In this document: piece after piece, positions 856-63,278 of the stretch
How positions within the stretch are numbered: position 1 is the first letter of the stretch
Layout: each line of letters starts with the position of its first letter
Assembly: GCF_036321535.1 (NCBI RefSeq)
Contig: NC_087452.1
Location: 34,658,001-34,722,000 of the forward strand
DNA from: Camelus dromedarius
Taxonomy: Eukaryota
Direction of reading: 5' to 3'
DNA: 64,000 nt
Notes under the pieces: generated by a model
Databases searched by the model: none
What the model was told of the DNA's origin: nothing
The model's input: the letters and a program-made list of their open reading frames with translations, nothing else
Made by a program: the position numbers and the translations under genes

Positions 856-2456
856 GGTAATGATCTATTTCTTAGGACTTGAAATTCTTAGTAATTTTGA
901 ACAAGGGGCCCTGCATTTTTATTTTGCAAATGATATAGCTGATCCTGGCCAGTAGTGACTCCACATTTGAAGTAATACAGGATGGAGGCCCCGGAAAACA
1001 TTTTAAGAACAGCTTACTTCCCTCCATCCTTGATGCAATTCTCCCTGAGTCCTCCCCTCAAGGCTTCAGTAGCCAGAGGGCAGAGGATGCTCCTGAAGCA
1101 ACAGAAGAGAGTGGTACTTATCATAGATGGAGACCCCATTCATTCGCCCTGCAATACCCAGAGAGCAACTGGTCAAAAATCTCACTCTCCAGAACCTTTT
1201 AAAGCAATGGGCTGCAGGAGAGATGCAGGCCTGGCCAGGGTGAAGGTTGGTGGGATCAGGGAGAAGGGGCCAGGGAGCTCATCCAAGGGAGAGGGAGGCC
1301 CCAGATCATACCAGGGGAAATTCCACACAGGAGCCAGAGCTCTGAGTCCTGCCATCAACCACATCTTGGCCAAGACCTTCCTTCCAAGGCCATACCCATA
1401 CCCAACCTGGGCCTCAGTTTCCTCCCTGGCCAAAAGAGACTGGCGGTAAGCCCTGCCCTGCCCTGCTGACAAAAGTGCTGTGAAGTCAGAGGAGGTGGAT
1501 GCTCAGTACCCCTTTGTACCCTGCAGGATCACATGCTCAGGTCACATCTTGGTCTCAGGTGTTCAGACTCCACAGCCATGAAGGACTCAAGGGGCCCCAG
1601 GCTCCCCTCACAGTGTTGTTACCATGACCATCCCAGGGATGAGTATTAGGGTTGTTGCTTTGATGACAGAATGGACCCCAGGGGCCCCATTCAGTGTTGC
1701 TGCCATTAGTGAATTCCTTGGAAAGAAAGGCACTTCAGTGAGGTTTCCCGTTAGCACACAGGTGACCATCATGGCAGGACCTCCCAGCAGAGTGGAGAGA
1801 GACCCAACTTAAGAGTCAGCAGGACGATCAGGTTTGTTTCCTCTTCACAGGCTGGTGTCACCCCTACACAGCATGGCTTCCAGCATCCCAGCTCTACCCC
1901 TACAGTCCCTGCCACCCCTCAGCTTCCCGGTCTCCATCCCCTTCCCTCTCCAACCTGCAATCCCAGCTCCTGAGTCTCTTTTCCTTGTGCGTTGGTTGAA
2001 ATCCTTATGGAAGGAGATTATTGCTGGAGACAGGATCAGTGGTTCCCTATGGGCAGTTGAGTGGGCAGGAAGGTGTTTTAAAATCTAAATTTCCTTTGAG
2101 AAATAAACAAAATCAGGTGCCATCTGTATCTATTGAGTTGGACCTGGGACCCGTGAAAAGATTCCTGGCTGGAACAATGAAATCTGTGGAAATTCTATTC
2201 TGATCTCTAGTCCGTCCCTACCCTAGGAGTTGATCCCTTCTCTAGCCACTCTACAAAGGGTGTGCTAGCTGGCAAGGCCCAAGTGGGGGCTCTGGAGGGG
2301 CTGTTTCTACCTTACCAGGATATCCATGAGCAGACAAAACAGTTCTACTAGGACAAGCCATGTTCTGGGGAGGGACTGCAGAGACATCCAGGAAAGATGG
2401 AGGTGGGTATGTGCCTCGTGTGAGGTGCCCTGTCTGACTCCATCCTCCTGAAATTT

Positions 2457-3590
2457 TATTTATTTATTTTTAAATTTTTTAATTTAATTTTATTTTTAAA
2501 CATTTTTTATTGAGTTATAGTCATTTTACAGTGTTGTGTCAAATTCCAGCGTAAAGCACAATTTTCAGTTATACATGAACATACATACATTCATTGTCAC
2601 ATTCTCTTTCGCTGTGAGCCACCACAAGATCCTGTATGTATTTCCCTGTGCTACACAGTACAATCTTGTTTATCTATTCTACATTTTGAAATCTCAGTCC
2701 CTTCCCACCCCCCATCCCCCTGGCAACCACAAGTTTGTATTCTATGTCTATGAGTCTGTTTCTGTTTTGTATTTATGTTTTTTTTTAATTCCACATATGA
2801 GCGATCTCATATGGTATTTTTCTTTTTCTTTCTAGCTTACTTCACTTAGAATGACATTCTCCAATAACATCCATGTTGCTGCAAATGGNNNNNNNNNNNN
2901 NNNNNNNNNNNNNNNNNNNNNNNNNNNNNNNNNNNNNNNNNNNNNNNNNNNNNNNNNNNNNNNNNNNNNNNNNNNNNNNNNNNNNNNNNNNNNNNNNNNN
3001 NNNNNNNNNNNNNNNNNNNNNNNNNNNNNNNNNNNNNNNNNNTTTTGAAGTAGGGTTCCTTCTGGATATATGCCCAGGAGCAGGATTCCTGGGTCATGTG
3101 GTAAGTCCNNNNNNNNNNNNNNNNNNNNNNNNNNNNNNNNNNNNNNNNNNNNNNNNNNNNNNNNNNNNNNNNNNNNNNNNNNNNNNNNNNNNNNNNNNNN
3201 NNNNNNNNNNNNNNNNNNNNNNNNNNNNNNNNNNNNNNNNATGACGGCCATTCTGACTGGTGTGAGTTTTAATTTGCATTTCTCTGATAATTAGTGATAC
3301 TAAGCATTTTTTCATGTGCCTATTGACAATTTGTATTTCCTCCTTAGAGAATTCCTTGTTTAGGTCTTCTGCCCATTTTTGGATTGGGTTGTTTGTTTTT
3401 TTCTTATTAAGTCGTATGAGCTGCTCATATATTTTGGAGAACAAGCCTTTGTCGGTTTCATTTGCAAAACTTTTCTCCCATTCCATAGGTTTTCGTTTTG
3501 TTTTATTATGGTTTCCTTTGCTTCTAAGTTTAATTAGGTCCCATTTGTTTATTCTTGTTTTTATTTCTATTGCTTGGGTAGACTGCTCTA
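2457..3590 (-). mobile_element. 5'-truncated L1 with 16-bp TSD
   Basis: TSD CATCCTCCTGAAATTT at 2441-2456 and 3591-3606; T-rich tail on the left; ORF2 peptide [12 protein letters not shown]...MEWEK. The empty site is present in the paralog near 51577-51592. Confidence 0.92.
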
Positions 3591-4074
3591 CATCCTCCTG
3601 AAATTTAATGTCTGGATAGGCTTGACCTGCCTCCTGCCTGAAGCACACGGCCTCCAGGAGGCTGACCTGAGATGCTGGGCTTTGCAGGTCCTTGTCCTGG
3701 TAGAGGGGTGGGGAGGAGGTGCCCTCTGAGATGTACTTGAGGCATCCAGATCCTCAAATGGGAGAGAATACCCTCTTAGGCTCTGGAAACCAGCCTGGCT
3801 TCTCTGCACCCGTGTCCCCAGAAAAAACTCACTCACAGGAATGGTACCCATGCCCACCCATCTGCCCCACATCTGGAGCTGGGAGCCTGGTCTCTTCTGC
3901 AAAGCTGGGCATCCTCCCACTCAGCCTGCAGCCTGGCCCAGCTCAACGTGTCATCCTGCTGGGACCAGCTGGTTGGATGTTTGCTGTCCTAGTTGATGGT
4001 GAGATCGAGCCTGGGCCTGGCTCAGGCTGATGTCCATGGCCAGGGAGGTGGGTTCAGCTCAAGCCAGACTCTGG

Positions 4075-4075
<1 letters not shown>

Positions 4076-4114
<39 letters not shown>
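4076..4114. repeat. (CAG/CTG)n trinucleotide repeat; paralog at 52061-52100
   Basis: Encodes poly-Leu on the minus strand within pseudogene exon 1. Confidence 0.9.
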
Positions 4115-7014
4115 CAGCCCCGGATGCCCGCCGAGGCTCCTGGCTGCAGTGTGGCGGGTGCAGCCTCTGCTTGGTCTCCTGTCCTCCTGGGGTGGAGTAG
4201 GGCTGCCCTCCTGCCGGCTGCCTCCTTCTCCAAGCCCCAGGCCTGGGACATCCCAGCCTGGCTGAGGGGTTTCCAGGGTGACTTACCCTCGTGGTTCTCC
4301 CCCAGCACCTCACTTCACGTGAAGTGGTCAGTGGGAAAGAGGAAGCTGACCCTGCGTGGAGGGTCCTGATACTCACCCCCAGCCCAAATCTCCACCCTCA
4401 CAGGGACCTGGGGAGGGCAGGGGAGGAGCCCAATCCCTCCCCTTGTCCCCGTGAGAGGGACAGCATGGTGGGTCAGTGGGAGGCATTGGGTCCATGTCTT
4501 GGATTTGCCATTTTTCAGGCAGAGAATTCTTGTTTGAGTGATTTAATTGGGTCTCATTTTCCTCATCCACTGGGCAACTCAGAGAGCTGGTGGGTTTGGG
4601 GCACAGCAGACCGGGGTCCATTTCCTTTTATCCTGGATTCTCACAGACAGGAAAGATGGCTGGGAGGAGAAAAGCAGGCGGGCCATGCAGGATCACGGCT
4701 CATTCCCTGAGTTTATTGGGGTGACGGGTGCATAATGGTTTCTCAAGGACCAGATGTGGGTTCAGGGGCCAGCCTGCCTGGGCACAAGGGCTGTGGGGTC
4801 TTTCCTGAGAAAACCTCCACTCTGACAGGCTGTGAGGACAAACAAGGAAAGCCAGATGCTGGAGGCAGGGACGGCACACCCCCATCCAGGGAGTTGCAGT
4901 CTGAGAACCTGACAGGGGACACTCCAAGGACACAGGGAAGGATGGGCAAGGGGACTTCAGCCTAAAGTCTGGGCAAATGCAAAGGCGCAGAGGAGGAAAC
5001 CACAGGGAGGATTTCAGGGGGAACTGGTACCCGGTCACCATGGGTATTGCTAGGTATTTTTCTCCTGTAATCACCTCCTTTTTCTCCTCAGACTTGGGAA
5101 ATGATACATCTTGACCAAGAGGCCACTGGGGCAACACCTGGACTGTGACACCAGGTTGCCCAGACGTCCCTCTCTCTCCGTCCTTCTCTAAGGCTGAGTG
5201 TGCAACCAGCACATCCGTCCAGGCTGACACCTTGTAAGGTACCATGTCCAAGGCCCCAAGGGTCCTGAGGGCAAACTGATTCCAAGAACCACCACAGTCC
5301 TCACAGAAACACGGCCATTCCGTGGGAGACTGGAATAGAATTTGCTTCGAAGTCTTGAGCCCCTCTATTGCTTTGGCCCATTGTGTCTCCCAGTTGGGCT
5401 CCTCCACCTCCCACACTCACCACCTCAGCCTAGAGTTTCAGCCAGAGCCCTGGACAGGGAACCATTGAGGTCAAGTCAGAAGGGACGTCCTGAGGCTGTG
5501 AGAGCCAAGAGAGGAAGTGCTGTGTCTAGTTGGAGGTCAGAGGAGGCTTCACAAGGTGAAAGATGACAGCAGGCAGAGGGATCAGGTGCAGAGATGGGAG
5601 AAGAGCAGAGGCTTTGAGGGGCCTGAGAGGTTGGAGTGGATGTGCCCCCTGACACCTGAGAGTGCAGGGCTGCGACTGAGGAGGATGGGAGGTGGCAAGA
5701 CTCCAGCCCTGAGCCTGCTGGAGGTGTTGGGCCCCTGAAGGCAGGGGGTGAAATGTTGGAATCAGCAGCTTGGTATACCCCTGGATAATGGCATGGAGAG
5801 TGGACTTTGGTATGGGGGGAGACTGGAACCAGAGACGGTGGAGTCTGGAGGATATGGCTACGCTTCAGAGGAGAAGGGGAGGTGGTAGGACAGGGCAGGG
5901 GTGACAGGAGGGACAGGGAGTGTCCTCAGAGGAAGGAGGAGCAGGTGTGGGGTCCCAGGCTGTCAGCTCAGGTCTCCTGTGGGGGCTGCCAGCCAACAGC
6001 CCCAGACAGCCCCGTGCGGACAACCAGGATGTTCATAGGTGTCTTGACTCAGAGACACAGACCAGTGATGTGTGTCCCTGATAACTGGCATCTGGAGAAG
6101 GGATGTGCCCAGGAATGTGTGAGGATGGGGAGGAGAAGCCGCCCGTGTGCACCTGTGCAAGCCCTGTGTACTATGAGGAGGGTCCTGGGAGGGTACCGAG
6201 CAGGAGCCACCAAGGAGGTGGGAGGTGACCCAGGAGAGGGACACCAGGGGAAAAGTGGAAGAGAGCTGTTTCACAGGACAGAGAGTCCACAGTCCTGTGA
6301 TGATAAGGACAATATTTGAGTGTAGCCTCTGGATCCAGGGAAGGCTGGCCATCCTGCAGTGGTTCTGAGTGTGACAGAGGACAAAGAAATGTGGTCAATA
6401 GTGTACGTGACCTTTCTTTGGGCTCGGCTGGGAAGGACTAGGGCAACAAGCCAGTTCTTTTGGGATCTACGGATGCGACATTTTTAATCTGAGAAAGGCA
6501 GAGAAGACTAGGAGCGGGGACAGATGCAGTCACGCCCCTCACTGGCTGATGGTTAGGTCCAGAGAACAGGATGGTGTGGCCTTGGTGTCTGGGGACAAGC
6601 TGGGTGGGAAGGCAAAGATGGAAGTGGGCTGTCATCTGTTCATCATATGTTAACTGTGTACCGACTGGGTGCCAGGCGGTGTGTAGAGCTGGAGGTTGTG
6701 TGGTCAATACACTCCTTCAGCTTAATTCTCAGGAGGTCACAGTGAGGAGGCAGAGAGGGTGTAGGACACAGCCTGGTTCCTCCATCTCCTGGAGGACTCA
6801 ACCCTCTGGAGCAACCCTGCCAATGAAACTCCCCATGGGGCCCAGAAGAGGCCAAGATGTTGTCAGGGAGATGGAGAAACCATTTCTTCACCTTACACAG
6901 GAGGCAACCTCACCCACTGCCCAGCAATCCCCTGAGGCAAGAGCGGGGCCTGAGGCAAGTCCAGCTCACACCCTGGCCGGGGGCAGGGATGGGGCAGGTG
7001 GGGAAGGCTCCTGC

Positions 7015-12200: not shown

Positions 12201-15200
12201 CTCTTCATTCACAGAATACTCTTAAAACTTGTATTATACAACTGCATTCATATAAACATGAATATAACCCAAGCTGCTTTTCATCTTATGTATTCATCAA
12301 TATGTCAGTGTTTTCATCCGTGATTTTAAACAATTAAAAGTAAAACTTTCTGTGGATCCCTAGATGTCTCAGGGGCTAGGAACGCTGCCTAGTGTGCTGA
12401 CCGATAAGTGGGTCCTGGCAGGTGACGATCCTGTAGGCGCCCAGACACGCCTGCAGACACTAAATGCCTTCTGCTGTCTTTTCCAGGATGACTTAACCTC
12501 GTGGTTCTCTTTCAGCTCCTAGTTTCAGCTGAATTGGTCCATGGGAAAGAGGAAGCTGATCCTGAGCGGAGGGTCCTGACCCTCACCCTTGACCCAAATC
12601 CCTGCCTTCACAGCACCATGGCTGCCATCGCAGGTCCCTGCAGAGGGCAGGGGGCAGGGGGCAGGGCCTGAATCCTTCCCCTTGTCCCTGTGAAAAGGAC
12701 AGGTGGTGGGTCATTGAGGGGCATGACTCCATGTCCCCAGTCTGTCATTTCTTGAGTAGGAGGTCCTTGATGGAATGACGTAGCCCATGGGTCTCATTTT
12801 CCTCATCAAATGGGCAGTCAGAGCTGGTGGAGATTTCCAAGGTTAGGGGCACAGTTTGGGGTTCTGGTCCAGTTCCATTGCTCTGGAGCCTCTGGAGTCT
12901 CACAGACAGGAAGGATGGTTGGGAGGAGAAAAGGAGCCGGGACGTCCAGATCATGGCTAATTTCCTGAGGTTGTTGGCACGACGGGTGCATGAGGGTTTC
13001 TCAATGATCAGATGTGGAGTCAGGGGCCAACCAACCTGGGGACAAGGGCAGAGGAGCCTTTCCTGAGAACACGTCTGCTCTGACAGGCTATGAGGACAAA
13101 CCAGGAAAGTCAGATGCTAGAGGCAGGGACAGCACACCCCCATCCAGGCAGTTGTAGTCTGAGGACCTGACAGGCGACATTCCAAAGACCCAGACTGTCC
13201 AAAGTCTGAGCAAACGCAAAGGTGCAGAGGCAGGAAAGCACAGAGAGGATTTCAAGGGGATCTGATACCCGGTCACCGTGGGTTTTGCTAGTTATTTTCT
13301 ACTGCAATCACCTCCTTTTCTTCCTCCTTCTTGGGAAAAGGATACAGCTTGACCAAGAGGCCACTGGGGCAACACCCGGACTGTGACACCAGGTTGCACA
13401 GAAGCCCCTCTCTCCTTCCTTCTCGAAGGGTGAGTGCGAAACCAGCACATCCGACCAGGCTGTTACCTTCTGAGGTGCCCCATTCCGTTGCCCAGAGTCC
13501 CCAGGTCACAGGTGGCCATGGCCTATCCCAGGCCTTCAGTCTCAGGGCCATTCCATGGGACACTGGATTAGAATTGGCATCTGGTCTCTGGGATCCTCTA
13601 ACACATCGGCTCATTCACTTTCCCAGCTGGACCCCCTCCTCCTCCCTCTCTGGCCACTCCATCCTGGTGTCTCAACCTGAGCCCTGGAGAGGGAGTACCT
13701 TGGGGACAAGTCAGAAGAGACTTTGTGAGGCTGTGGGAGCTAAGATGGGGAGTTGCTGTTTCTCTGGTTGAAGGTCAGATAAGGCTTCACAAAACGAAAA
13801 GTCACGGCAGTCAGAGGGATCAGGTGTAGCGATATGAGAAGAGCAGAGGCTCCGAGGGGCCTGAGAGGTTGGGGTGGACGTGGCGGCCTGACACAGGGTT
13901 TTGCAGGTGAGCACCTGAGGACAACCTGATCCAGACCCTGAGCCACTGACTCAAGGCGGGAGGTTTGATGGACCCCTGGACAATGGCAGGGAACACTGGG
14001 CTGTGGTGTGGGAAGAGCCTGGAACCAGAAAAGGTGGAGTCTGGAGGTTGTGGCTACACTTCAGAGGAGAGGAGATGGTGGTAGGACAGGGCAGGGGTGA
14101 CAGTGGGGACAGGGAGGGCCCTCAGAGGAAGGAGCAGGTGGGGTTCCCAGGCTCTCAGCTCAGGGCTCCCGTGAGGGCTCCTAGCCAACAGCCCCAGACA
14201 GCCCTGTGCTGACAACCAGGAGTGTTCACAGGAGTGTTGCCTCGGACCCACAGACCAGTGATGTGTGTCCCTGATAACTAGTATCTGAGGAAGGGATGTG
14301 CCCAGAATGCATGAGAACTGCTTTGAGAAGCTGTACAGATCACGTGTGCAAGCCCTGCAGTAAAAGTTTTATTAAAAGTTCAGTACTTAGATTAGACAGA
14401 GCAGGAGGCACCCGGGAGGCCAGGAAGTGGACCCAGGAAGGTGGTCCCAGGGGAGAATGGGGGAGGGGGCAGTTTCAGTAGACAGAGGGGTCCCTGGCAC
14501 CTGTGAAGGCAAGGACAAGGCTTCAGCATGCCCTTTGTATCATTCGAAAGCTGTTAAGCAGGCATGGACCTTGAGTTGAAAGAGGACAAATAGTGGGGTC
14601 AGAGTGTAGATGAGCCTTCTCTTACTGGCTGTCTGGGTAAGGGGAACAGTGTGCATCTGGAAGGGGCTGGGACAGGACATTTTTAGAGTGAAGAAGGCAA
14701 AGGAGAAGAATCCAGAAGAGGGGACAGTGGAGGAGATGCCCTGACTGGCTGAGGGCTGGGTCCGCAGAATAGGACGGTGTGGCCCTGATGTCTGCCTAGG
14801 GAGTGGATGGGTGTGAAAGGCACTAGATGGGGGTGGTCCTGCCATCTATTCATCATATGTTAACTGAGTGCCTACTGGGGGCCAGGAGGCCCAGGAGCTG
14901 GAGGTTGTGTGGTGAATACACTCTTTCAGCCTGATTCTGAGGAGATCACAGTGAGGAGGCCGAGAGGGTGTAGGACACAGCCATTCCCTCTGTCTCCTGG
15001 AGGACTCAACCCTGTGGAGCAACCCTGCCCATGAAACTCCCCATGGGGCCCAGGAGAGGCCGAGATGCTGTCAGGGAGATGGAGGAACCTTTTCTTCACC
15101 TTGCACAGGAGGCAGACCTCACCCACTGCCCAGCAATCCCCTGAGGCAAGAGCGGGGCCTGAGGCAAGTCCAGCTCACACCCTGGCCGGGGACAGGGATG

Positions 15201-29300: not shown

Positions 29301-32300
29301 ACACAGTGGGGGGCCTCCAGGCTTGCTGTGCTCCGACTGAGGGATGCCCGTGCCAGTCACATCCCGAGTCCTGTTCCCCAGCCCCATGGACTCTCTAGCT
29401 TCCGCCCGAGAGTGGGGGTTCCTTGTGTCCCATTCGCACCCCGTGTTCTCCTGTGTGTCACTCTGCCCCTGTGCCTACCCAGCCAGAGCAGGGAAGGATG
29501 CTGACAGGGGAGACAGGGGTACACTGGGACTTTCAGGGCCCTGGCACTTCTATCTTCCTGGGCCTCTTCATTCACAGAATACTCTTAAAACTTGTATTAT
29601 ACAACTGCATTCATATAAACATGAATATAACCCAAGCTGCTTTTCATCTTATGTATTCATCAATATGTCAGTGTTTTCATCTGTGATTTTAAACAATTAA
29701 AAGTAAAACTTTCTGTGGATCCCTAGATGTCTCAGGGGCTAGGAACGCTGCCTAGTGTGCTGACCGATAAGTGGGTCCTGGCAGGTGACGATCCTGTAGG
29801 CGCCCAGACACGCCTGCAGACACTAAATGCCTTCTGCTGTCTTTTCCAGGATGACTTAACCTCGTGGTTCTCTTTCAGCTCCTAGTTTCAGCTGAATTGG
29901 TCCATGGGAAAGAGGAAGCTGATCCTGAGCGGAGGGTCCTGACACTCACCCTCGACCCAAATCCCTGCCTTCACAGCACCATGGCTGCCATCGCAGGTCC
30001 CTGCAGAGGGTAGGGGGTAGGGGCTGAATCCTACCCCTTGTCCCTGTGAAAAGGACAGGTGGTGGGTCATTGAGGGGCATGACTCCATGTCCCCAGTCTG
30101 TCATTTTTTGAGTAGGAGGTCCTTGATGGAATGACGTAGCCCATGGGTCTCATTTTCCTCATCAAATGGGCAGTCAGAGCTGGTGGAGATTTTCAAGGTT
30201 AGGGACACAGTTTGGGGTTCTGGTCCAGTTCCATTGCTTTGGGGTCTCTGCAGTCTCACAGACAGGAAGGATGGTTGGGAGGAGAAAAGGAGCTGGGCCG
30301 TCCAGATCATGGCTCATTTCCTGAGGTTGTTAGCACGACGGGTGCATGAGGGTTTCTCAAGGATCAGATGTGGAGTCAGGGGCCAACCATCCTGGGGACA
30401 AGGGCAGAGGGGCCTTTCCTGAGAACACGTCTGCTCTGACAGGCTATGAGGACAAACCAGGAAAGTCAGATGCTAGAGGCAGGGACAGCACACCCCCATC
30501 CAGGCAGTTGTAGTCTGAGGACCTGACAGGCAACATTCCAAGGACCCAGACTGCGGTCTAAAGTCTGAGCAAACGCAAAGGTGCAGAGGCAGGAAAGCAC
30601 AGAGAGCATTTCAAGGGGATCTGATACCCGGTCACCGTGGGTATTGCTAGTTATTTTCTACTGCAATCACCTCCTTTTCTTCCTCCTTCTTGGGAAAAGG
30701 ATACAGCTTGACCAAGAGGCCACTGGGGCAACACCCGGACTGTGACACCAGGTTGCACAGAAGCCCCTCTCTCCTTCCTTCTCGAAGGGTGAGTGCGAAA
30801 CCAGCACATCCGACCAGGCTGTTACCTTCTGAGGTGCCCCATTGAGTTGCCCAGAGTCCACAGGTCACAGATAGCCATGGCCTATCCTAGGCCTTCAGTC
30901 TCAGGGCCATTCCATGGGACACTGGATTAGAATTGGCATCTGGTCTCTGGGATCCTCTAACACATCGGCTCATTCACTTTCCCAGCTGGACCCCCTCCTC
31001 CTCCCTCTCTGGCCACTCCATCCTGGTGTCTCAACCTGAGCCTTGGAGAGGGAGTACCTTGGGGACAAGTCAGAAGAGACTTTGTGAGGCTGTGGGAGCT
31101 AAGATGGGGAGTTGCTGTTTCTCTGGTTGAAGGTCAGATAAGGCTTCACAAAACGAAAAGTCACGGCAGCCAGAGGGATCAGGTGTAGCGATATGAGAAG
31201 AGCAGAGGCTCCGAGGGGCCTGAGAGGTTGGGGTGGACGTGGCGGCCTGACACAGGGTTTTGCAGGTGAGCACCTGAGGACAACCTGATCCAGACCCTGA
31301 GCCACTGACTCAAGGCGGGAGGTTTGATGGACCCCTGGACAATGGCAGGGAACACTGGGCTGTGGTGTGGGAAGAGCCTGGAACCAGAAAAGGTGGAGTC
31401 TGGAGGTTGTGGCTACACTTCAGAGGAGAGGGGATGGTGGTAGGACAGGGCAGGGGTGACAGTGGGGACAGGGAGGGCCCTCAGAGGAAGGAGCAGGTGG
31501 GGGTTCCCAGGCTCTCAGCTCAGGGCTCCCGAAAGGGCTCCTAGCCAACAGCCCCAGACAGCCCTGTGCTGACAACCAGGGGTGTTCACAGGAGTGTTGC
31601 CTCAGACACACAGACCAGTGATGTGTGTCCCTGATAACTAGTATCTGAGGAAGGGATGTGCCCAGAATGCATGAGAACTGCTTTGAGAAGCTGTACAGAT
31701 CACGTGTGCAAGCCCTGCAGTAAAAGTTTTATTAAAAGTTGAGTACTTAGATTAGACAGAGCAGGAGGCACCCGGGAGGCCAGGAAGTGGACCCAGGAAG
31801 GTGGTCCCAGGGGAGAATGGGGGAGGGGGCAGTTTCAGTAGACAGAGGGGTCCCTGGCACCTGTGAAGGCAAGGACAAGGCTTCAGCATGCCCTTTGTAT
31901 CATTCGAAAGCTGTTAAGCAGGCATGGACCTTGAGTTGAAAGAGGACAAATAGTGGGGTCAGAGTGTAGATGAGCCTTCTCTTACTGGCTGTCTGGGTAA
32001 GGGGAACAGTGTGCATCTGGAAGGGGCTGGGACAGGACATTTTTAGAGTGAAGAAGGCAAAGGAGAAGAATCCAGAAGAGGGGACAGTGGAGGAGATGCC
32101 CTGACTGGCTGAGGGCTGGGTCCGCAGAATAGGACGGTGTGGCCCTGATGTCTGCCTAGGGAGTGGATGGGCGTGAAAGGCACTAGATGGGGGTGGTCCT
32201 GCCATCTATTCATCATATGTTAACTGAGTGCCTGTTGGGGACCAGGAGGCCCAGGAGCTGGAGGTTGTGTGGTGAATACACTCTTTCAGCCTGATTCAGA

Positions 32301-37700: not shown

Positions 37701-39667
37701 CCTGGGCCTCTTCATTCACAGAATACTCTTAAAACTTGTATTATACAACTGCATTCATATAAACATGAATATAACCCAAGCTGCTTTTCATCTTATGTAT
37801 TCATCAATATGTCAGTGTTTTCATCTGTGATTTTAAACAATTAAAAGTAAAACTTTCTGTGGATCCCTAGATGTCTCAGGGGCTAGGAACGCTGCCTAGT
37901 GTGCTGACCGATAAGTGGGTCCTGGCAGGTGACGATCCTGTAGGCGCCCAGACACGCCTGCAGACACTAAATGCCTTCTGCTGTCTTTTCCAGGATGACT
38001 TAACCTCGTGGTGCTCTTTCAGCTCCTAGTTTCAGCTGAATTGGTCCATGGGAAAGAGGAAGCTGACCCTGAGCGGAGGGTCCTGACCCTCACCCTCGAC
38101 CCAAATCCCTGCCTTCACAGCACCATGGCTGCCATCGCAGGTCCCTGCAGAGGGCAGGGGGTAGGTGCTGAATCCTACCCCTTGTCCCTGTGAAAAGGAC
38201 AGGTGGTGGGTCATTGAGGGGCATGACTCCATGTCCCCAGTCTGTCATTTTTTGAGTAGGAGGTCCTTGATGGAATGACGTAGCCCATGGGTCTCATTTT
38301 CCTCATCAACTGGGCAGTCAGAGAGCTTGTTGATATTCCCCCATATTTGGGGTACTATTTCGGACAGTGGTACACTTCCATTTCCTTGGTGTCTCATGGA
38401 TAGGAAGGATGTCTGGGGAGAGAAAAGGAATGATGTCCATGGAGGATCATGGCTTACTCCCTGAGTTTATCGGGGTAATGGGTGCATGAGGGTTTCTCAA
38501 GAACCAGATGTGGAGTCAGGGGCTAACCTGCCTGGGCACTAGGGCTATGGGGTCTTTCCTGAGAAGACCTCTGCTCTGACAGGCTGTGAGGACAAACCAG
38601 GGAAGTCAGATGCTAGAGGCAGGGACAGCACACCCCCATCCAGGCAGTTGCAGTCTGAAGTCCTGAAAGGGGACACTCCATGGACCCAGGGAAGGATGAG
38701 GAATGGAAGTTCAGTCTAAAGTCTGAACAAACGCAAAGGTGCAGAGGCAGGAGAGCCGACTGAAGATTTCAGGGGGACCTGACACCCAGTAACCGTGAGT
38801 ATTGCTAGTTATTTTCTACTGTAATCACCTTCTTTTCCATCTCTGACTTGGGAAAATGATACAGCTTGACGAAGATGCCACTGGGGCAACACCTGGACTG
38901 TGACACCAGGTTCCCCAGAAGCCCCTCTCTCCTTCCTTCTCCAAGGCTGAGTGTGCAACCAGTGCATCTGTCCAGGCTGTCACATTCTGAGGTGCCCCAT
39001 CCGATTGCCCAGAGTTCCATAGGTCAAAGAAAGCCAAGAGGTAACTCAGGCTTTCGATCACAGGGCCATTCCATGGGAGACTGAATTAGAATTGACATCA
39101 CGGTCTCTAGGCCGCTCTGACATATCGACTCATTCATTTTCCCAGCTGGGCCCCCTCCTCCTCCCACACCGGCCGCTCCATCCTGGTGTCTCAACTTGAG
39201 CCCTGGATAGGGAGTACCTTGGGGACAAGTCAGAAGAGACTTCGTGAGGCTGTGGGAGCCGAGATGGGGAGTTGCTGTTTCTCTGGTTGGATGTCAGCCT
39301 GATTCTGAGGAGGTCACAGTGAGGAGGCCGAGAGGGTGTAGGACACAGCCTGTTCCCTCTGTCTCCTGGAGGACTCAACCCTCTGGAGCAACCCTGCCCA
39401 TGAAAGTCCCCACGGGGCCCAGGAGAGGCTGAGATGTTGTCAGGGAGATGGAGAAACCATTTCTTCACCTTGCACAGGAGGCAGACCTCACCCATTGCCC
39501 AGCAATCCCCTGAGGCAAGAGCGGGGCCTGAGGCAAGTCCAGCTCACACCCTGGCCGGGGGCAGGGATGGGGCAGGTGGGGAAGGCTCCTGCTTGAGCAA
39601 TTGCATCAGGCCCAGGCTGAGCATAAAGGAGGGTCCTGTGGGCTGGGAGGAGGCAGACTCGGGGACC

Positions 39668-49790: not shown

Positions 49791-50055
49791 CCTCACTAAT
49801 CCCGTTCTCCCGTGTTCTGCTGGGGCCTGGTCACCCCTTCTGAATAATGGGAGTTGCAACAGTCAGCACTGATACGTGCCTGTATGAGTGTGTTTAGAAC
49901 TCTTATTTTTTTTATACAGAAGACTTCAGTGAACCAGTAAATCAGAGTCGTGAGTATTCTATTTTGCAGACTATTAAAACCGCCACTATCTGAGGAACTC
50001 CTGAAGCAGCTCCTTGGAGCCCTTCTTGCCATGACTGTATTTGGGGAGCTGGGGG

Positions 50056-50225
50056 CAGGGCCAGCATCATGACTGTGTCACCAGTGCAGTCACACAGGCC
50101 CCCTATGGTCAGGAGGGCCCTATACTTGGTTTAATACTCTGTTCTTGAGGTCTTGAAATACTCTATACTATTTGAGCAAGGGGTCCTGCAATTTCAATTT
50201 GCTAGTTATGTAGCCAGTTCTGGCC
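50056..50225. mobile_element. MER45A-like hAT fragment (partial paralog at about 866-950)
   Basis: cagggccagcatcatg...gcagtcacacaggcccc...cttggtttaatactctg...gtcttgaaat...ttgagcaaggggtcctgc resembles MER45A as I recall it. Confidence 0.6.
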
Positions 50226-50846
50226 AGTGGTGATGCCACACTTCCCACAACACATGCAGGAGGCGCTAGAAGCTGATTTCCCTGTGCACTTGCCTAAAAA
50301 TCCTTGAGACCTTGCCCGCAGCCTTGAGCAAGCAGAGGGCAGGGGAGGGCCCAGGAAGGGAAGGAAGAGAGCGGGAAAACAAGGCAGAAGCGGACCCCAG
50401 AGCAGCTCTTGGGTGCCCAGAGTGCTGTTGGACTGTAGCCCAGAGTTAGAACTGAGTCTCCAAAAGCAATGGGCTGCAGGAGAGATGCAGGGCTGGCCAG
50501 GGTTGGGGGTGGTGGGGACAGACAGAGGGGACCAGGGAGCTAGTCTGAGAGAGAGAGAGGCCCCAGATGGGGCCATGGGAAACTCCACACACGAGCCAGA
50601 GCTCTGGATCCTGCCATCAACCCTGACTTGGCCAAGACCTCCTCCCAAGGCCACACCCCAACCCCGCCCTGGACCTGAGTTTCCTCCCTGCCCAAAGGAG
50701 ACTGGTGGAAGCCCTGGCTGCCCTGCTGACAAGAGTGCTGTGAGCTCAGAGGAGGTGGATGCTTGGGTGTCCTTTGTGCCCTGAAGGACCACATGCACAG
50801 GCCGCATCCTTGGACTCAGGTGGCCAGTCCTTGGAAAGAAACACAC

Positions 50847-52057
50847 TTCAGTGAGGTTTTTCATGGGCACACAGGTGACCATCACGGCAGGACCTCCTTC
50901 CACCATGGAGGGACCCCCCTGCTTCACCAGCTGCACGGACAGCAGGGGATCAGGCTGGTCTCCTCTTCATATCTTGAGTTTCACACCAACGCAGCATGGC
51001 TCCCAGCAGCCCCAGCTCTACCCTCCACAGTCCCTGCCACCCACCAGCCTTCCCAGTCTCCATCCCCCTCCAGCCTGCGATCCCAGCTCCCCAGACTCTT
51101 CCCTTGTTTGTTGTTTTAATCCGAGCTCCGTTTCAGAAAGGGAAGAAACTCCTAGGGAGGGAGGTTTTGCTGGAGACATGATCAGTGGTTCTCAGCTGGT
51201 GGGGAGTGGTCAGAAACGTGCCTTTAAAATCTCCTAAATTTCTTTTTAGAAATAAGCAAAAGCAGGTGAGACCTGGATCTGCTGAGCTGGACCTGGGATC
51301 CATCTGAGTGGTGGGACTGGGGAAATGAAATCTGTGGAAATTATATTCTGATCTCCAGTTCGTCCCTCCCCCAGGAGTTGGTCCCTTCTCAAGTCACTTT
51401 ACAAAGTGCATGGTAGATGTCAGAGCCTCTGGAGGGGCTGTTTCTACCTTCCCAAGGCATCACGAAAAGACTGATTGATCTACACTAACAACAAGCCAGG
51501 CTGTGGGGAAGGACCACAGAGCCACCTGGGGAGATGGAGGGGGTGTGCGCCTCGTGTGAGGTGTCCTGTCTGACTCCGTCCTCCTGGAATTTAATGTCTG
51601 GATAGGCTTGGCCTGCCTCCTGCCTGAAGCACACGGCCTCCAGGAGGCTGACCTGAGATGCTGGGCTTTGCAGGTCCTTGTCCTGGTAGAGGGGTGGGGA
51701 GGAGGTGCCCTCTGTGATGTACTTGAGGCATCCAGATCCTCAAAGGGGAGAGAATACCCTCTTAGGCTCTGGAAACCAGCCTGGCTTCTCTGCACCCGTG
51801 TCCCCAGTAAAAACCCACTCACAGGAATGGTACCCATGCCCACCCGTCTGCCCCACATCTGGGGCTGGGAGCCTGGTCTCTTCTGCAAAGCTGGGCATCC
51901 TCCCATTCAGCCTGCACCCTGGCCCAGCTCAACGTGTCATCCTGCTGGGACCAGCTGGTTGGATGTTTGCTGTCCTAGTTGATGGTGAGATCGAGCCTGG
52001 GCCTGGCTCAGGCTGATGTCCGTGGCCAGGGAGGTGGGTTCAGCTCAAGCCAGACTC

Positions 52058-52100
<43 letters not shown>

Positions 52101-52128
52101 CAGCCCCGGATGCCCGCCGAGTCTCCTG
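50847..52128 (-). pseudogene. Diverged cathelin-like pseudogene, copy B
   Basis: Exon 1 52128-51823 (306 nt, QETRRASGAV-L13-QSLA*...AQARSH..., GTGAGT donor). Exon 2 51682-51575 is exactly 108 nt with AG/GT borders: [36 protein letters not shown]. Exon 3 starts at 50930 after a cag acceptor: LVKQGGPSMVEGGPAVMVTCVPMKNLTE. No ATG; in-frame stops in exon 1. Confidence 0.75.
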
Positions 52129-55100
52129 GCTGCAGTGTGGCGGGTGCAGCCTCTGCTTGGTCTCCTGTCCTCCTGGGGTGGAGTAGGGCTGCCCTCCTGC
52201 CGGCTGCCTTCTCCTCCAAGCCCCGGGCCTGGGACATCCCAGCCTGGCTGAGGGGTTTCCAGGGTGACTTACCCTCGTGGTTCTCCCCAGCTCCTCACTT
52301 CACGTGAAGTGGTCAGTGGGAAAGAGGAAGCTGACCCTGCGTGGAGGGTCCTGACACTCACCCCCGGCCCAAGTCCCCACCCTCACAGCACCATGGCTGC
52401 CTTCCCAGGACCCTGGGGAGGGCAGGGGTGAGCCCAATCCCTCCCCTTGTCCCCGTGAGAGGGACAGCATGGTGGGTCAGTGGGAGGCATTGGGTCCATG
52501 TCTTGGATTTGCCATTTTCCGGGCAGAGGCTCCTTGTTTGAGTGATTTACTTGGGTCTCATTTTCCTCATCCACTGGCCAACTCAGAGAGCTGGCGGGTG
52601 TTTCCCACAGTTGTAGGAAGGGCAGACTGGGGTCCAGCTTTCATTCCCCTGGAGTCTCGTGGACAGGAAGGCTGAAAGGGAGGAGCAAAGGAGCGGTGGC
52701 CATGGAGGACCAGTGCTCACTCCTGGAGGTTGTTGGGGTGACGGGTGCATGAGGATTTCTCAAGGACCAGATGTGGAGTCAGGGGTCAACCCTTCAGGGG
52801 ACAAGAGCTGGGGTGTATTTCCAGAGAAGACCTCCACTCTGATAGATGTGAGGAGAAACCAGGAAAGCCGGACGCTGGAGGCAGGGACGGCACACCCCCA
52901 TCCAGGGAGTTGCATCCTGAGAACCTGGCAGGGGACACTGCAAGGACGCAAGGAAGGATCGGGAAGGGGACTTCAGTCTGAAGTCTGAGCAAATCAAAGG
53001 TGCAGAGGAGGAGAGCACAGGGAGGATTTCAGGGGGAACTGGTACCCGGTCACCATGGGTATTGCTAGGTATTTTCTCCTTTAATCACCTCCTTTCCCTC
53101 CTCTGACTTGGGAAAAGGACACAGCTTGACCAACAGGCCACTAGGGCAGCACCCAGACTGTGACACCAGGTTGCCCAGAAGTCCCTCTCTCCTTCCTTCT
53201 CCAAGGGTGATTACCTAAGTAGCAGCGTCCACCACAGCTGTCACTTTCTGAGGGGCTCCGCCCACTTTCTGAGGGACTCGTTCCACAAGTCCCATAGGCC
53301 AACCAAGTCCCGGAAATATCCCATTCCTCACAGCCACAGGGCCATTTCATGGCCTCTAGATGCCTTTATCATTTTGACTTATTCTCCCAGCTGTGCTCTC
53401 TCTCCTTCCAGCTCAGCCACCCCAGCCTAGAGTATCAACCAGACCCCCTGACAGGCTATCAAATCAGAAGAGACTTCCTGAGGCCGTGGGAGCCAAGAGA
53501 AGGAGGTCGTTGTGTGGTTGGAGGTTAGATAAGGTTAGGAAGGTCACAGCAAACAGAGGGATCAGGTGTGGAGATGTGAGAAGAGCAGAGACTTCAGGGG
53601 TCTGAGAGGTTGGGATGGATGTGGTGGCCTGACACAGGGTCCTGCAGAGCTGGGGCTGCGGTCCATGGGGACATCCACATCCAGACCCTGACACAGATGT
53701 CTAAGGAAGGAGATAAAATGGCCAAGTCAAAGGTTTGATGGACCCTGGACAATGATAGGGAACGTGGACTGTGGTGTGGGTGGAGCCTGGAGCCAGAGAC
53801 GGTGGAGTCTGGAGGTTGTGGCCACACTTCAGAGGAGAAGGGGGTGTGGTAGGACAGGACAGGGGGGACAGGGGGACAGGGAGTGCCCTCAGACGAAGAA
53901 GGAGCAGGTGGGTGTTCCCAGGCTCTCAGCTCAGGGCTCCTGTGGGGGCTGCCAGCCAACAGCTCCAGACAGCCGTATGCGGACAGCCAGGTGTGTTCAT
54001 GGGAGTCTTGACTCAGAGACACAGACCAATGATGTGTGTCCCTGATAACTGCTATTTGGAGAAGGGATGTGCCCAGGAATGTGTGAGGACTGGGAGGAGA
54101 AGCAGCTCAGATGCACCTGTGGAAACCCTGCGTATTATGAGGAGGGTCCTGGAAGGAGACAGAACAGGAGCTGCCAGGGAGGTGGGAGGTGACCCAGAAA
54201 AGCAGAATTGGGGGAGAAAGGGAAAGAGGGCTGGCTGTTCAGGAGGGCTGAGGGATCCCCAGCACCTGTGAAGATAAGGAGAAAGCTTCAGCACTGGCCA
54301 CTGGATCCAATGAGGCATGGCCAGACTGCAGTGGCCTTGAAAGTCAGGGAGGGCAAAGAAATGGAGTGAGTGGTGTAAGAGACTTTCCTCAGGCTGGGCT
54401 TGGAGAAGTGCCAGGGCAATAGGTCATGCCTGGTGTGGGCTAGAGATGGGACATTTTTAGACTGAGAAAGGCAGGGGAGAGGGGACTGATGGGGACTGAT
54501 GGCAACTGGCTGAGGGCTGGGTCCACAGAACAGGATGGTGTGGCCTTGAAGTCTCCCTAGGGAGTGGGTGGGTGGGAAGGGCACTAGATGGGGGTGGTGC
54601 TGTTATCAATTCATCAAATGATAACTGAATACCTACTGGGTTCCAGGAGGGCCTAAGGCTGGAGGTTTAGTAGTGAATAAAAATCACACGGGAGGGGCTG
54701 TTGAGGGGGCTGTACTGCTTGGGGGCAGGGAGACAGATCAGACAAGGAAGCACTCTTTCAGCCTCATTCTGAGGAGGTCACAGTGAGGAGGCAGAGAGGG
54801 TGTAGGACACAGCCTGGTTCCTCCATCTCCTGGAGGACTCAACCCTCTGGAGCAACCCTGCCCATGAAACTCCCCATGGGGCCCAGGAGAGGCCGAGATG
54901 CTGTCAGGGAGATGGAGGAACCATTTCTTCACCTTGCACAGGAGGCAGACCTCACCCACTGCCCAGCAATCCCCTGAGGCAAGAGCGGGGCCTGAGGCAA
55001 GTCCAGCTCACACCCTGGCCGGGGGCAGGGATGGGGCAGGTGGGGAAGGCTCCTGCTTGAGCAATTGCATCAGGCCCAGGCTGAGCATAAAGGAGGGTCC

Positions 55101-61433: not shown

Positions 61434-63278
61434 TCATAAAAACCAGCTGGCTATACGGATGACTGTCGGGACATACTTGATCGCCTTTCTTACTATCCTG
61501 CCCAAACCGACACTCTGGAGCTGTACATGGGAAGAAACAAGTTACTTGTGAGAAATGAACCCAGATGTAAGAACAGAATCTTTCCCATTTACACACCTCC
61601 CCTACCTGGGTGACCCCAGGGGCCTTGTGTCCCCAGTTCACCATCTGGCTGTGACCTTGGAGCATGTGGTTGAATCCCTACACCCACACACAGATGAGGA
61701 AACCAAGGTCCAGAGATGACAAGGGGCTTCCCAGGGTCACAAGCCCATCCCAGCAAAGCTTGACAGAAGCAGGGGTTGAAAGCCTTTTACTGTGGTCAAT
61801 GCCTCTTAAACTTCAGCACAGAATCCCCAGGAGGACTTCTTAAAATACAAACTGCTGAGCCCCACCCCAGACTCTAATTCAGTAGGTATGAGTGGGGCCT
61901 GAGAGTCTGCTTTTCTGACAAGCCCTGGGTGGGAAGCCCACTTAGAGAACCACTGCTCTAAGGGATTCCAGAGCCTAAGTGGGAGATCTGGGGCTACAGT
62001 GAGCGGGGTCCAGGGTACAAGGGCTTCCCCTAACCTGGATGGGACATAAGGTAATTGGTCCAAAGAATATTCCACACACCACCCCCACCAGCAGCCCCTG
62101 CAGCCCAGAAGGGGTCACTCACCTCATCACAGGTGACTGCCAATTGGCCCGTGATCTGGTCCAGGGTGACTGTCCCCAAACACTGTTTCACCACCTGGAA
62201 GGGGAGACCCCAGGTCAGACTGGAACCCCTGAGCCATAACCACCCAGCCTCACCCCAGGAGCTGCTAACCACCCCCTGAAGCCTTCTGTTAGGGTCCTGG
62301 GGAGGCACCCACCAGTGCTCCCAGATCCCAGCCTCACCCCATTCTCCTTGAAGTCACACTGCTCCGGTGGCTGCTGTGTCCTCCTGGGACACACGGTCTC
62401 CTTCACCATGAAGCTCACAGGCTTTGGGGTGTCTGGGTCCTCGTCCTGCTCAAGGATCAAAGTGGGGAGACTGGCTCAGGCTCATGCTTCTTTGTGTGAC
62501 CTGTCTCCCTGCCCCCAGCAGGACAGCCCCCTTGACAGCCCGTCCCATGTGCCTGGCCCTGGGCTGGGGGCTGGGTACAGAGGGGAGGAGGACACAGCCT
62601 GGTCCTGGGCTCCCAGGCGCACAGGGAGCAGGAGGGGACCTCAGACCCGCTCTCCTGAGGGGCACCTCCCCCTTGGAGGGGCTGAGGGAAGTCAGGGGAC
62701 ACCTGCAGGGAAAGACCTTGTCACTGGAACCCCAAGGCTGAGCACAGCCCTTCCCTGGTGGGGAGACAAAGGCGTGAACAGGGGACTGGAAGCAGGGAAG
62801 TCACATCCCAGAGCCAGTGACCCCAGCGTATCCCTGGAGCCCCCAGGAGTCCCTGGAGCCTGAGCGGGCTGTCAGGGCTCTGTTCCCACAGCAGAGATGC
62901 CAGGCAGAAGGCTCTCACAATGGGAGGGGACCCAGCACTGGGAAGATTTCTGTGACAGGTGGGATCCCACCTAGAGGGAGAGGTGCCTTCCTGACAGGAG
63001 GTACAGCACGAGCAAAGGGAGGGACAGTGTGGCCAAGCCTGGCGGGAGACGCCTCCCTCCCCAGCCCCTCCCCGACTCACAGCCTTGGGCGGCAGGTCCA
63101 GCTCCAGGAGGCGGTAGAGATTGGGGTCTGAGGACTGCTCATTGAGGCGATCCACAGCTCGAAGCACCGCCTCCCTATAGCTCAGGGCCTGGGCGCTGGC
63201 CCAAGGCACCGCTAGTCCCAGCAGCAGTAGCCACAGTGGCCAGCGGCCCAGGGAGAGGCTGGCCCTCTGGGTCTCCAT
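61434..63278 (-). CDS. CATHL: Cathelicidin gene 7 (inverted), 154-aa precursor; predicted mature [28 protein letters not shown]-29-like
   Basis: Minus-strand exons 63278-63081, 62445-62338, 62194-62123, 61520-61434 with GT-AG sites and four Cys. AATAAA (TTTATT on +) at 61363-61368. Exon 4 was translated by hand; it is absent from the ORF track. Confidence 0.95.

What the first reader, a model, noticed from the sequence alone, without database searches (positions are those of the whole stretch)
50780..52128. Hidden ancient cathelin-family gene lineage (copy B) with atypical architecture
Several independent features line up on the minus strand. There is an (M>Q)ETRRAS start, a Leu signal, AQARSH (compare AQALSY) and a phase-0 GTGAGT donor. 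An exactly 108-nt AG/GT exon carries E-A-V-C and F-Q-E-D-G, and a cag|LVKQ...VTC exon follows. It is far more diverged than the seven active genes are from each other: exon 1 is 102 versus 66 codons, introns 1 and 2 are 140 and 644 nt, and only two of four Cys remain. A possible 66-nt intron 3 leads to a candidate exon 4 at 50780 (GTKDTQASTS...), which is low confidence. It may be the relic of a distinct NGP-like or CATH-B1-like branch that could be intact in other mammals (inference).
Basis: partly seen in the sequence, partly recalled or inferred. Interest (0 to 1): 0.75.

Follow-up and report, generated by a model that had tools for sequence, protein, structure and literature searches.

The report
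Dead second-lineage cathelicidin gene in camel
This stretch of the dromedary antimicrobial-peptide (cathelicidin) gene cluster is the decayed remains of a second, very old cathelicidin gene that is dead in camels, cattle, hippos and whales but still intact in manatees, tenrecs and elephant shrews.

Summary
Several details are wrong.

**What it is.** Window 50859-52120 (minus strand) is a non-processed cathelicidin pseudogene.
- The spliced exons 2+3 are the top hit among all 3652 comparable exon pairs in the window (16 bits, E=0.0012).
- Profile-profile probability is 96%. Pfam itself finds nothing.

**Where else it occurs.** Orthologous relics lie in alpaca, banteng, hippo and minke whale. 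All are broken, so the gene died before these groups split.

**Closest intact relative.** The relic's promoter and exon 1 align at DNA level with an intact manatee cathelicidin gene (E=1e-27 and 3e-57).
- The match is reciprocal: the manatee gene hits only the relics, and tree-shrew CAMP hits only the seven active genes.
- The same gene type is intact in tenrecs and elephant shrews.
- The relic is therefore a second placental cathelicidin lineage. It is not NGP-like. A CATH-B1-like origin was not tested directly.

- "QETRRAS" is an out-of-frame reading. The true start maps to 52120-52118, which is now TCG.
- The leucine run is a camelid CTG expansion of a real leucine-rich signal-peptide core.
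- "Exon 1" holds three unmentioned TGA codons.
- The GTGAGT donor lies about 100 nt past the ancestral exon end, so the "atypical architecture" fails.
- Exon 4 is unsupported.

**Expression.** Contigs from RNA libraries show no splicing.

The scan had already noted copy A at 1734-4142 of this window.

The parts
52121..52631 (-). Former promoter and 5' flank of the dead gene
   Evidence: Window 52631-51960 aligns with manatee L008 9517-10144 at 63% over 693 nt, E=3e-57. That manatee stretch is the upstream region plus exon 1 of the intact gene P0291. The relic DNA profile hits L008 9820-10126 at E=1.1e-27.
52118..52120 (-). Position of the lost start codon (TCG here, TTG in banteng, ATG in manatee)
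   Evidence: Four-species DNA alignment A2. Translations from this point are SAGIRGC (camel), LEGIKVT (banteng) and MEGIRVP (manatee).
51924..52120 (-). Relic of exon 1 (signal peptide plus start of the pro-region). The 3' end is uncertain, somewhere in 51918-51933.
   Evidence: Camel AEPTSLATDISLSQA matches manatee SEPTSLTEDFSLSQA at 11 of the 16 residues from EPTSL onward. The Afrotherian HMM scores 15.4-17.6 bits. The exon end is placed from the manatee TGG|GTAAGA boundary and the banteng/whale AAG|GTGA site.
52061..52103 (-). CTG microsatellite, a camelid expansion of the leucine core of the signal peptide
   Evidence: There are 13 CTG copies in both dromedary copies, more in alpaca and none in banteng. 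Afrotherian proteins have L6-7 at this position.
52045..52047 (-). Nonsense codon TGA where the intact genes have TGG (Trp of ...GLTW|)
   Evidence: Translation. The stop falls in the same alignment column in camel, alpaca and banteng. The Afrotherian sequences have W there.
51575..51682 (-). Relic of exon 2 (108 nt, open in camelids only)
   Evidence: The orthologous exon is 109 nt in hippo and whale and 110 nt in banteng, with stops in the camel reading frame (banteng TAG and TGA, whale TAG) and a frame shift plus TGA in hippo. The relic DNA profile hits true exon 2 of gene 4 and of whale genes in register, at E=0.03-0.12.
50859..50930 (-). Relic of exon 3 (LVKQG...MVTCVP). Cys3 is lost and there is no donor after 72 nt.
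   Evidence: Banteng has LLKQG...MVTCLP and hippo has ...RVTCAP. The 'TC-x-P' ending is shared with Afrotherian and platypus proteins.
51576..52600 (-). Tract made uniform between copies A and B (gene conversion)
   Evidence: Copies A and B are 96-99% identical here but only 70-88% in the flanks. Across the 5' tract the figure is 97.5%, against 74-77% just downstream. Camel and alpaca orthologues are about 98% identical in both parts.
1715..4400 (-). Copy A of the same relic, split by an inserted element at 2459-3593
   Evidence: The target-site duplication covers IKFQED. A 10-nt deletion removes the LVKQ start of exon 3 in copy A.
50780..50858 (-).
   Evidence: There is no similarity to Afrotherian exon-4 peptides. 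Alpaca has a 1-nt deletion here, and the other species diverge as neutral DNA.

Best explanation
This is a non-processed (intron-bearing) pseudogene of a second cathelicidin lineage. It does nothing as a coding gene.

**Origin and spread.** Its orthologue is intact in Afrotheria: manatee, tenrecs and elephant shrews. In the ancestor of camels, ruminants, hippos and whales it lay head-to-head, about 3 kb upstream of a classic cathelicidin gene, and it was already disabled. It was then copied along with that unit. This window holds copies A and B, and promoter stumps remain upstream of genes 2, 4 and 5. Alpaca has a third copy.

**Decay.** The copies decay at the neutral rate. A roughly 1-kb 5' tract is the exception and is kept alike between copies by gene conversion.

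**Shown:**
- homology to cathelin;
- orthologous relics in four other cetartiodactyl species, all broken;
- DNA-level reciprocal match to the manatee gene;
- the list of lesions;
- the conversion tract;
- no spliced RNA.

**Inferred:**
- that both lineages were present in the placental ancestor;
- the time of death.
For: **Homology to cathelin**
- The exon 2+3 pair is top of 3652 candidate pairs, at 16.0 bits and E=0.0012.
- The independently decayed hippo copy scores 15.4 bits, and hhalign gives 96.4% probability.
- The three exons joined, with X at stops, align collinearly to a classic HMM at 24.1 bits.

**Distribution**
- Relics were found in alpaca (96% identical), whale, hippo (two copies) and banteng (two copies).

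**Shared lesions**
- Shared by camel and banteng: the first base of the start codon changed (ATG to T-G), TGG to TGA, and loss of Cys2 and Cys3.

**Orthology to the manatee gene**
- The relic profile hits L008 at E=1.1e-27, and blastn gives E=3e-57.
- In reverse, the manatee gene hits only the relics and their stumps, and Tupaia CAMP hits only the seven active genes.
- The constrained tree joining the relics to the Afrotherian group has the best likelihood found. It is 5.4 lnL above the free search and about 9.8 above the relic-plus-classic tree.

**No sign of function**
- Camel and alpaca are about 98% identical in both the 5' tract and its flank.
- RNA-library contigs run unspliced through both proposed introns.
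Against: - Pfam hmmscan gives no hit for the spliced exons 2+3.
- Single-exon HMM scans do not lift the relic above noise.
- AU tests do not reject relic plus classic eutherian genes (p=0.23 and 0.37) or relic plus NGP (p=0.36).
- Exons 2-3 score higher with the classic HMM (11.6 bits) than with the Afrotherian HMM (1.7 bits).
- No relic was found in 39 kb of the pig cluster or in the 10 kb upstream of Tupaia CAMP.
- In manatee and tenrec no classic gene lies within 10 kb, so the head-to-head arrangement is not shared.
Confidence: 0.8

Rival explanations
1. It is a cetartiodactyl-specific duplicate of a classic cathelicidin gene that died early. It looks ancient only because it has decayed neutrally for more than 60 million years.
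For: - AU tests do not reject grouping the relic with classic eutherian genes.
- Exons 2-3 and FQEDG|LVKQ resemble the classic type.
- The relic sits inside the classic cluster.
Against: - The promoter and exon 1 match the manatee gene at E=3e-57, but match no classic gene in the same window. Tupaia CAMP matches all seven classic genes and not the relic.
- The N-terminal pro-piece extension EPTSL..D.SLSQ is present in Afrotherian proteins and absent from classic ones.
Confidence: 0.12
2. It is a relic of the NGP/p15 branch or of an avian CATH-B1-like branch.
For: - The relic plus the armadillo p15/NGP protein P0258 is not rejected by the AU test (p=0.36).
- The relic falls in the non-classic half of the tree.
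Against: - The closest intact genes are ordinary cathelicidins with a cationic C-terminal peptide after a VRxRR site, not NGP.
- Holding the relic with NGP costs 6.8 lnL, whereas holding it with the Afrotherian genes gains likelihood.
- In published synteny maps NGP lies in a different place, beside KLHL18 (PMC12006171).
Confidence: 0.03
3. The resemblance is chance, or the stretch now works as something else: a non-coding RNA or a regulatory element of the neighbouring active gene.
For: - Pfam finds nothing, and single-exon scores are at noise level.
- RNA-library contigs cover 50000-52520.
- The 5' tract is 97-99% alike between copies.
Against: - Chance is excluded by the window-wide ranking and by the DNA match to a real gene.
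- Depth is only 3-5, with no joints, and could be genomic DNA.
- Between camel and alpaca the tract is no better conserved than its flank, which fits conversion rather than constraint.
Confidence: 0.05

Closest known systems
Afrotherian cathelicidins annotated by NCBI as 'cathelicidin-related peptide Pt_CRAMP1-like' (Trichechus inunguis, P0291), 'cathelicidin-2-like' (Tenrec, P0233/P0289), 'cathelin-like' (Echinops, P0290), 'CAP18-like' (Elephantulus, P0292) and 'Pt_CRAMP2-like'/'lutzicidin-like' (Rhynchocyon, P0293/P0254)
   Same: - The promoter and exon 1 align at DNA level (E=3e-57).
- MEGIR start, L6-7 core and ...TW|(A/S)EPTSL..D.SLSQ pro-piece.
- 108-nt exon 2.
- 'TC-x-P' end of exon 3.
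- Best-likelihood tree position.
   Different: - Those genes are intact, with four cysteines and a lysine-rich exon-4 peptide.
- The camel copy has no start codon, a frame shift, two stops in exon 1, two cysteines lost, a ruined donor and no recognisable exon 4.
Classic eutherian cathelicidins (CAMP and the seven active genes of this window; Pfam PF00666)
   Same: - Same family and the same cluster.
- Same exon plan.
- FKENG|LVKQ junction motif.
- First and fourth cysteines.
   Different: - There is no detectable DNA similarity to them apart from a 145-nt upstream piece.
- The promoter is different.
- The relic has an extra 10-residue N-terminal pro-piece.
- It falls outside the classic clade (bipartition support 97/95).
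Known ruminant cathelicidin pseudogenes (CATHL3L2, CATHL9, CATHL8p, CATHL1p; PMC3932039, PMC6719980)
   Same: Dead cathelicidin genes inside the same cluster.
   Different: Those are young, classic-type copies that are easily recognised by sequence. This relic is far older, of another lineage, and not mentioned in those papers.
Platypus cathelicidins P0179/P0193 ('PMAP-36-like') and P0217
   Same: - Best single-sequence match of exons 2+3 (39% over 61 residues).
- They group with the relic and the Afrotherian genes in the tree.
   Different: Monotreme genes. The grouping is weakly supported (52-56% bootstrap; 92/83).

Membership tests
Cathelicidin family (cathelin-like domain, Pfam PF00666) | Significant match to the family profile | tested here: inconclusive
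   Pfam hmmscan gives no hit at E<=10 for spliced exons 2+3 of camel or hippo. A broad home-made HMM gives 16.0 bits, E=0.0012 over all 3652 candidates. hhalign gives 96.4% probability. The three exons against the classic HMM give 24.1 bits.
Cathelicidin family (cathelin-like domain, Pfam PF00666) | Four-exon plan with a 108-nt phase-0 exon 2 and a short exon 3 | tested here: met
   Exon 2 at 51682-51575 is 108 nt with AG/GT boundaries, and exon 3 starts after cag at 50930. The layout matches the seven active genes and the manatee gene. Exon 4 was not found.
Cathelicidin family (cathelin-like domain, Pfam PF00666) | Four conserved cysteines and PROSITE motif 2, F-x-[LIVM]-K-E-T-x-C-x(10)-C-x-F-[KR]-[KE] | tested here: not met
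   Only Cys1 (EAVC) and Cys4 (VTC) remain. Cys2 is Ile and Cys3 is Gly. The motif reads V-S-L-L-E-A-V-C-x(11)-I-K-F-Q-E. This is as expected of a dead gene.
Cathelicidin family (cathelin-like domain, Pfam PF00666) | Start codon, signal peptide and open reading frame | tested here: not met
   The ATG position reads TCG. There is a frame shift before the leucine run, and TGA codons lie at 52047-45 and 51939-37.
Afrotherian-type cathelicidin orthology group | DNA-level reciprocal best match that includes non-coding flank | tested here: met
   The relic matches manatee L008 at E=1.1e-27 and 3e-57. In reverse, the manatee gene's best hits in the window are relic B (215 bits) and relic A (141 bits), with no hit to any classic gene. 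Tupaia CAMP shows the opposite pattern.
Afrotherian-type cathelicidin orthology group | N-terminal pro-piece ...LTW|(A/S)EPxSLxxDxSLS and MEGIR start | tested here: met
   11 of the 16 residues from EPTSL onward match manatee. GIRG in camel and EGIKV in banteng appear in the manatee frame.
Afrotherian-type cathelicidin orthology group | One clade with these genes in a family tree | tested here: inconclusive
   This is the best-likelihood topology (p-AU 0.56 and 0.72), but the rival placements are not rejected. Only 60-110 sites are available.
NGP / p15 (neutrophilic granule protein) | Groups with NGP proteins and lies at the NGP locus | tested here: inconclusive
   Constraining the relic with armadillo P0258 costs 6.8 lnL, with p=0.36. 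The relic's DNA orthologue is a cathelicidin with a cleavable cationic peptide, not NGP. The relic lies inside the classic cluster, whereas NGP lies beside KLHL18 according to PMC12006171. The locus itself was not examined here.
Avian CATH-B1-like | Groups with CATH-B1 | not tested
   No sequence identified as CATH-B1 was in my set. The only named bird sequence, P0209 (CTHL2), is not near the relic.

The most novel reading that the evidence does not exclude
The placental ancestor carried two cathelicidin lineages in the CAMP cluster: the classic one and an 'Afrotherian-type' one with platypus relatives. The second survives intact only in Afrotheria and persists as a recognisable corpse, more than 60 million years old, across Cetartiodactyla. 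This would qualify the published picture that eutherians keep only classic cathelicidins plus NGP (PMC12006171, PMC12002115).
Probability: 0.6. Interest if true: 0.6.

Novelty: new member of a known kind. Interest (0 to 1): 0.5.

Why it matters
Cathelicidins are a main family of mammalian antimicrobial peptides, and their history in placentals is usually told as one classic lineage plus NGP.

- **A datable fossil.** A relic shared by camels, cattle, hippos and whales, whose live counterpart exists in manatees, tenrecs and elephant shrews, points to a second lineage in the placental ancestor.
- **Peptides worth testing.** The Afrotherian peptides (lysine-rich, about 35 residues) form a distinct and little-studied group.
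- **Annotation.** For the camel genome the message is plainer: the locus should be marked as a pseudogene, not a hidden gene.

Tried and rejected
- **First HMM test.** I used wrong exon-3 coordinates and a narrow cetartiodactyl-only model. It gave about 0 bits and was discarded.
- **Single-exon HMM scans of the six-frame window.** The true genes score 33-75 bits. The relic exons sit in the noise, so there is no power for 24-36 residue pieces.
- **DNA local alignment of classic exons to the relic.** z was only 1.1-1.9, although exons 1 and 2 landed at the proposed places.
- **blastn of the relic against the active genes.** Nothing was found apart from 52256-52400.
- **Pfam.** No hit.
- **Pig locus L004 (39 kb) and Tupaia L007.** No relic was found. 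Neither covers a whole cluster, so this is not evidence of absence.
- **Missing sequence.** Donkey P0143 and bat P0133 are not on record. Tenrec, Rhynchocyon and Elephantulus loci came back without DNA.
- **Read laying on four RNA-library runs.** Only contigs, at depth 3-5 and with no joints. This cannot show transcription or its absence.
- **AU tests.** No placement was rejected.
- **Literature.** I found no description of this relic, nor of the Afrotherian genes as a separate lineage. The library holds open-access papers only.

Full report
**Setting**

The window is part of the dromedary cathelicidin cluster. Exon 1 of one gene is 98% identical to 'protegrin-2 [Camelus dromedarius]'. The window holds seven intact classic genes, with ATGs at 7090, 15299, 24491, 32660, 39668 and 55132 on the plus strand and at 63278 on the minus strand. 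All have the usual plan: exon 1 of 198 nt, intron 1 of about 630 nt, exon 2 of 108 nt, intron 2 of 140-235 nt and exon 3 of 72 nt. The finding lies on the minus strand about 3 kb upstream of gene 6, head to head with it. A second copy (A, 1715-4400) lies the same way upstream of gene 1.

**The observation**

**Is it more than chance?**

The first tests were discouraging.
- blastn finds no DNA similarity between the relic and the active genes.
- Single-exon HMM scans of the six-frame translation leave the relic exons in the noise.
- Pfam's hmmscan finds nothing for the spliced exons 2+3.

An unbiased test was positive. I listed every open AG-108nt-GT exon followed within 1 kb by an open AG-72nt piece on both strands of the gene-masked window, which gave 3652 pairs.
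It aligns end to end at the right positions. The best unrelated pair scores 24.6.
- It is also first with a broad cathelin HMM, at 16.0 bits and E=0.0012 for that set. The best unrelated pair scores 5.3, and the best of 5000 shuffles scores 10.3.
- hhalign of the relic alignment against the family gives 96.4% probability.
- The three exons joined, with X at the stops, align collinearly to a classic eutherian HMM at 24.1 bits.

**Relatives in other genomes**

I fetched loci around annotated cathelicidin genes and searched them with the relic.
- Alpaca has the orthologue at 96% identity, plus a further copy upstream of the gene-7 orthologue.
- Minke whale has one copy.
- Hippo has two copies and banteng has two.
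- All are on the strand opposite to the next classic gene.
- All are broken. Exon 2 is 109 nt in hippo and whale and 110 nt in banteng, and carries stops. Whale and hippo lack the 5' half of exon 1. Whale lacks exon 3.
- LVKQG (LLKQG in banteng) and MVTC are shared, so they are ancestral and not chance.
- The loss of Cys2 and Cys3 is shared by all species. The TGA at 52047-45 is shared by camel and banteng.

The gene was therefore already dead in the common ancestor of these groups. By established dates that is at least about 60 million years ago.

**What lineage?**

A family tree placed the five relics (100/100 as a group) outside the classic clade of eutherian, marsupial and some platypus genes. 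They sit next to platypus P0179 and two proteins that turned out to be Afrotherian. A search with the tenrec protein found the same type in Tenrec (two genes, tail to tail), Echinops, Amazonian manatee, Elephantulus and Rhynchocyon, all intact.

Their N-termini explain the relic's exon 1 better than classic genes do. Manatee reads ...LLLLLLLGLTWSEPTSLTEDFSLSQAEV and camel reads ...LLLLQSLA*AEPTSLATDISLSQAQA, with the stop exactly where the Trp codon stands.

The decisive result is at DNA level.
- The relic profile hits the manatee locus at 9820-10126 with E=1.1e-27.
- Window 52631-51960 aligns with manatee 9517-10144 at E=3e-57. That stretch is about 480 nt of upstream sequence plus exon 1.
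- A further upstream block also aligns.
- In reverse, the manatee gene region finds relic B, relic A and short stumps upstream of genes 2, 4 and 5, and none of the seven active genes.
- The tree-shrew CAMP region finds all seven active genes (E down to 1e-144) and not the relic.

These are two separate orthology groups. The likelihood of the tree is highest with the relics joined to the Afrotherian genes. With 60-110 usable sites, however, the AU test rejects neither a classic nor an NGP placement.

- *Start codon.* Aligned to manatee and banteng, the ATG falls on TCG at 52120-52118 (TTG in banteng). In that frame camel reads SAGIRGC, banteng LEGIKVT and manatee MEGIRVP. 'QETRRAS' is therefore the same DNA read in another frame, and its likeness to METQRAS is accidental.
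- *Leucine run.* It is a CTG microsatellite that grew in camelids on top of a real L6-7 core.
- *Exon-1 end.* By the manatee boundary and the banteng/whale AAG|GTGA site, exon 1 ends at about 51918-51933.
- *Overall plan.* The ancestral gene had the ordinary plan, like the manatee gene: exon 1 of 195 nt, exon 2 of 108 nt and intron 2 of 173 nt. Only the 644-nt intron 2 is long.
- *Exon 4.* The proposed 66-nt intron 3 and exon 4 have no support. There is no similarity to the lysine-rich Afrotherian peptides, alpaca has a 1-nt deletion there, and the other species diverge freely.

**Copies and conversion**

Copies A and B are 96-99% alike over about 1 kb (B 51576-52600) but only 70-88% alike on both sides. 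The tract ends at the element inserted in copy A. Camel and alpaca orthologues are about 98% alike in the tract and the flank alike. Five sites group the copies by species, against one or none otherwise. This is gene conversion, not selective constraint.

**Expression**

Four RNA-library runs hold pieces of the stretch, but only as low-depth contigs. These run straight through both proposed introns and show no joint. This gives no support for splicing and may be genomic DNA.

**Literature**

- The 2022 camelid survey lists functional genes only.
- The ruminant pseudogenes on record are classic-type.
- Two 2025 papers state that eutherians keep a single cluster with classic cathelicidins plus NGP.
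- I found no paper that treats the Afrotherian genes as a separate lineage. This is within an open-access library only.

**Verdict**

This is a real, very old, dead cathelicidin gene of a second lineage. The claimed odd architecture, the start motif and exon 4 are not.

Noticed in passing
window 54679-54751 (and the same point upstream of each active gene): There is a sharp identity step. From about 380 nt upstream of each ATG through exon 1, the seven active genes are 95-100% alike. Just upstream they are only 70-80% alike. This is the edge of the concerted-evolution block of the classic genes.
   Followed up: partly
window 12480-12782, 29843-30138, 37987-38282: Stumps of the relic's promoter lie upstream of genes 2, 4 and 5. 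They match manatee L008 9585-9858 at E~1e-21 and window 52256-52400 at 84%. The rest of the relic has been deleted in these units.
   Followed up: partly
L001 20947-21858 (alpaca): A third relic copy lies upstream of the orthologue of gene 7 and is 98-99% like the alpaca B copy. The dromedary may have one just beyond the right end of the window (past 64000).
   Followed up: no
window 2459-3593: An inserted element splits exon 2 of copy A, with a target-site duplication over ATTAAATT(C/T)CAGGAGG. It contains the masked N runs, and its class was not checked.
   Followed up: partly
L008 22935-23024 (manatee, minus strand): A degenerate exon-2-like piece lies about 10 kb downstream of the intact manatee gene. 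It matches the camel relic's exon 2 (69%, E=3e-5) better than the intact gene's own exon 2 does. It may be a second, decayed copy placed tail to tail, like the tenrec pair.
   Followed up: partly
proteins P0233, P0289-P0293, P0254: Afrotherian cathelicidins are named by automatic annotation after snake, bird or rabbit peptides. They carry a PQPDWD motif and a lysine-rich C-terminal peptide, and they fall outside the classic mammalian clade.
   Followed up: partly
window 52525-53000: None of the four RNA-library runs has a contig here, although all cover parts of 50000-52520. The cause is unknown and may be filtering.
   Followed up: no
L004 10001-29045 (pig), L005 10001-39223 (hippo): Annotated gene models for PR-39 (pig) and a PR-39-like protein (hippo) span 19-29 kb across several cluster units. 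These are probably chimeric models.
   Followed up: no
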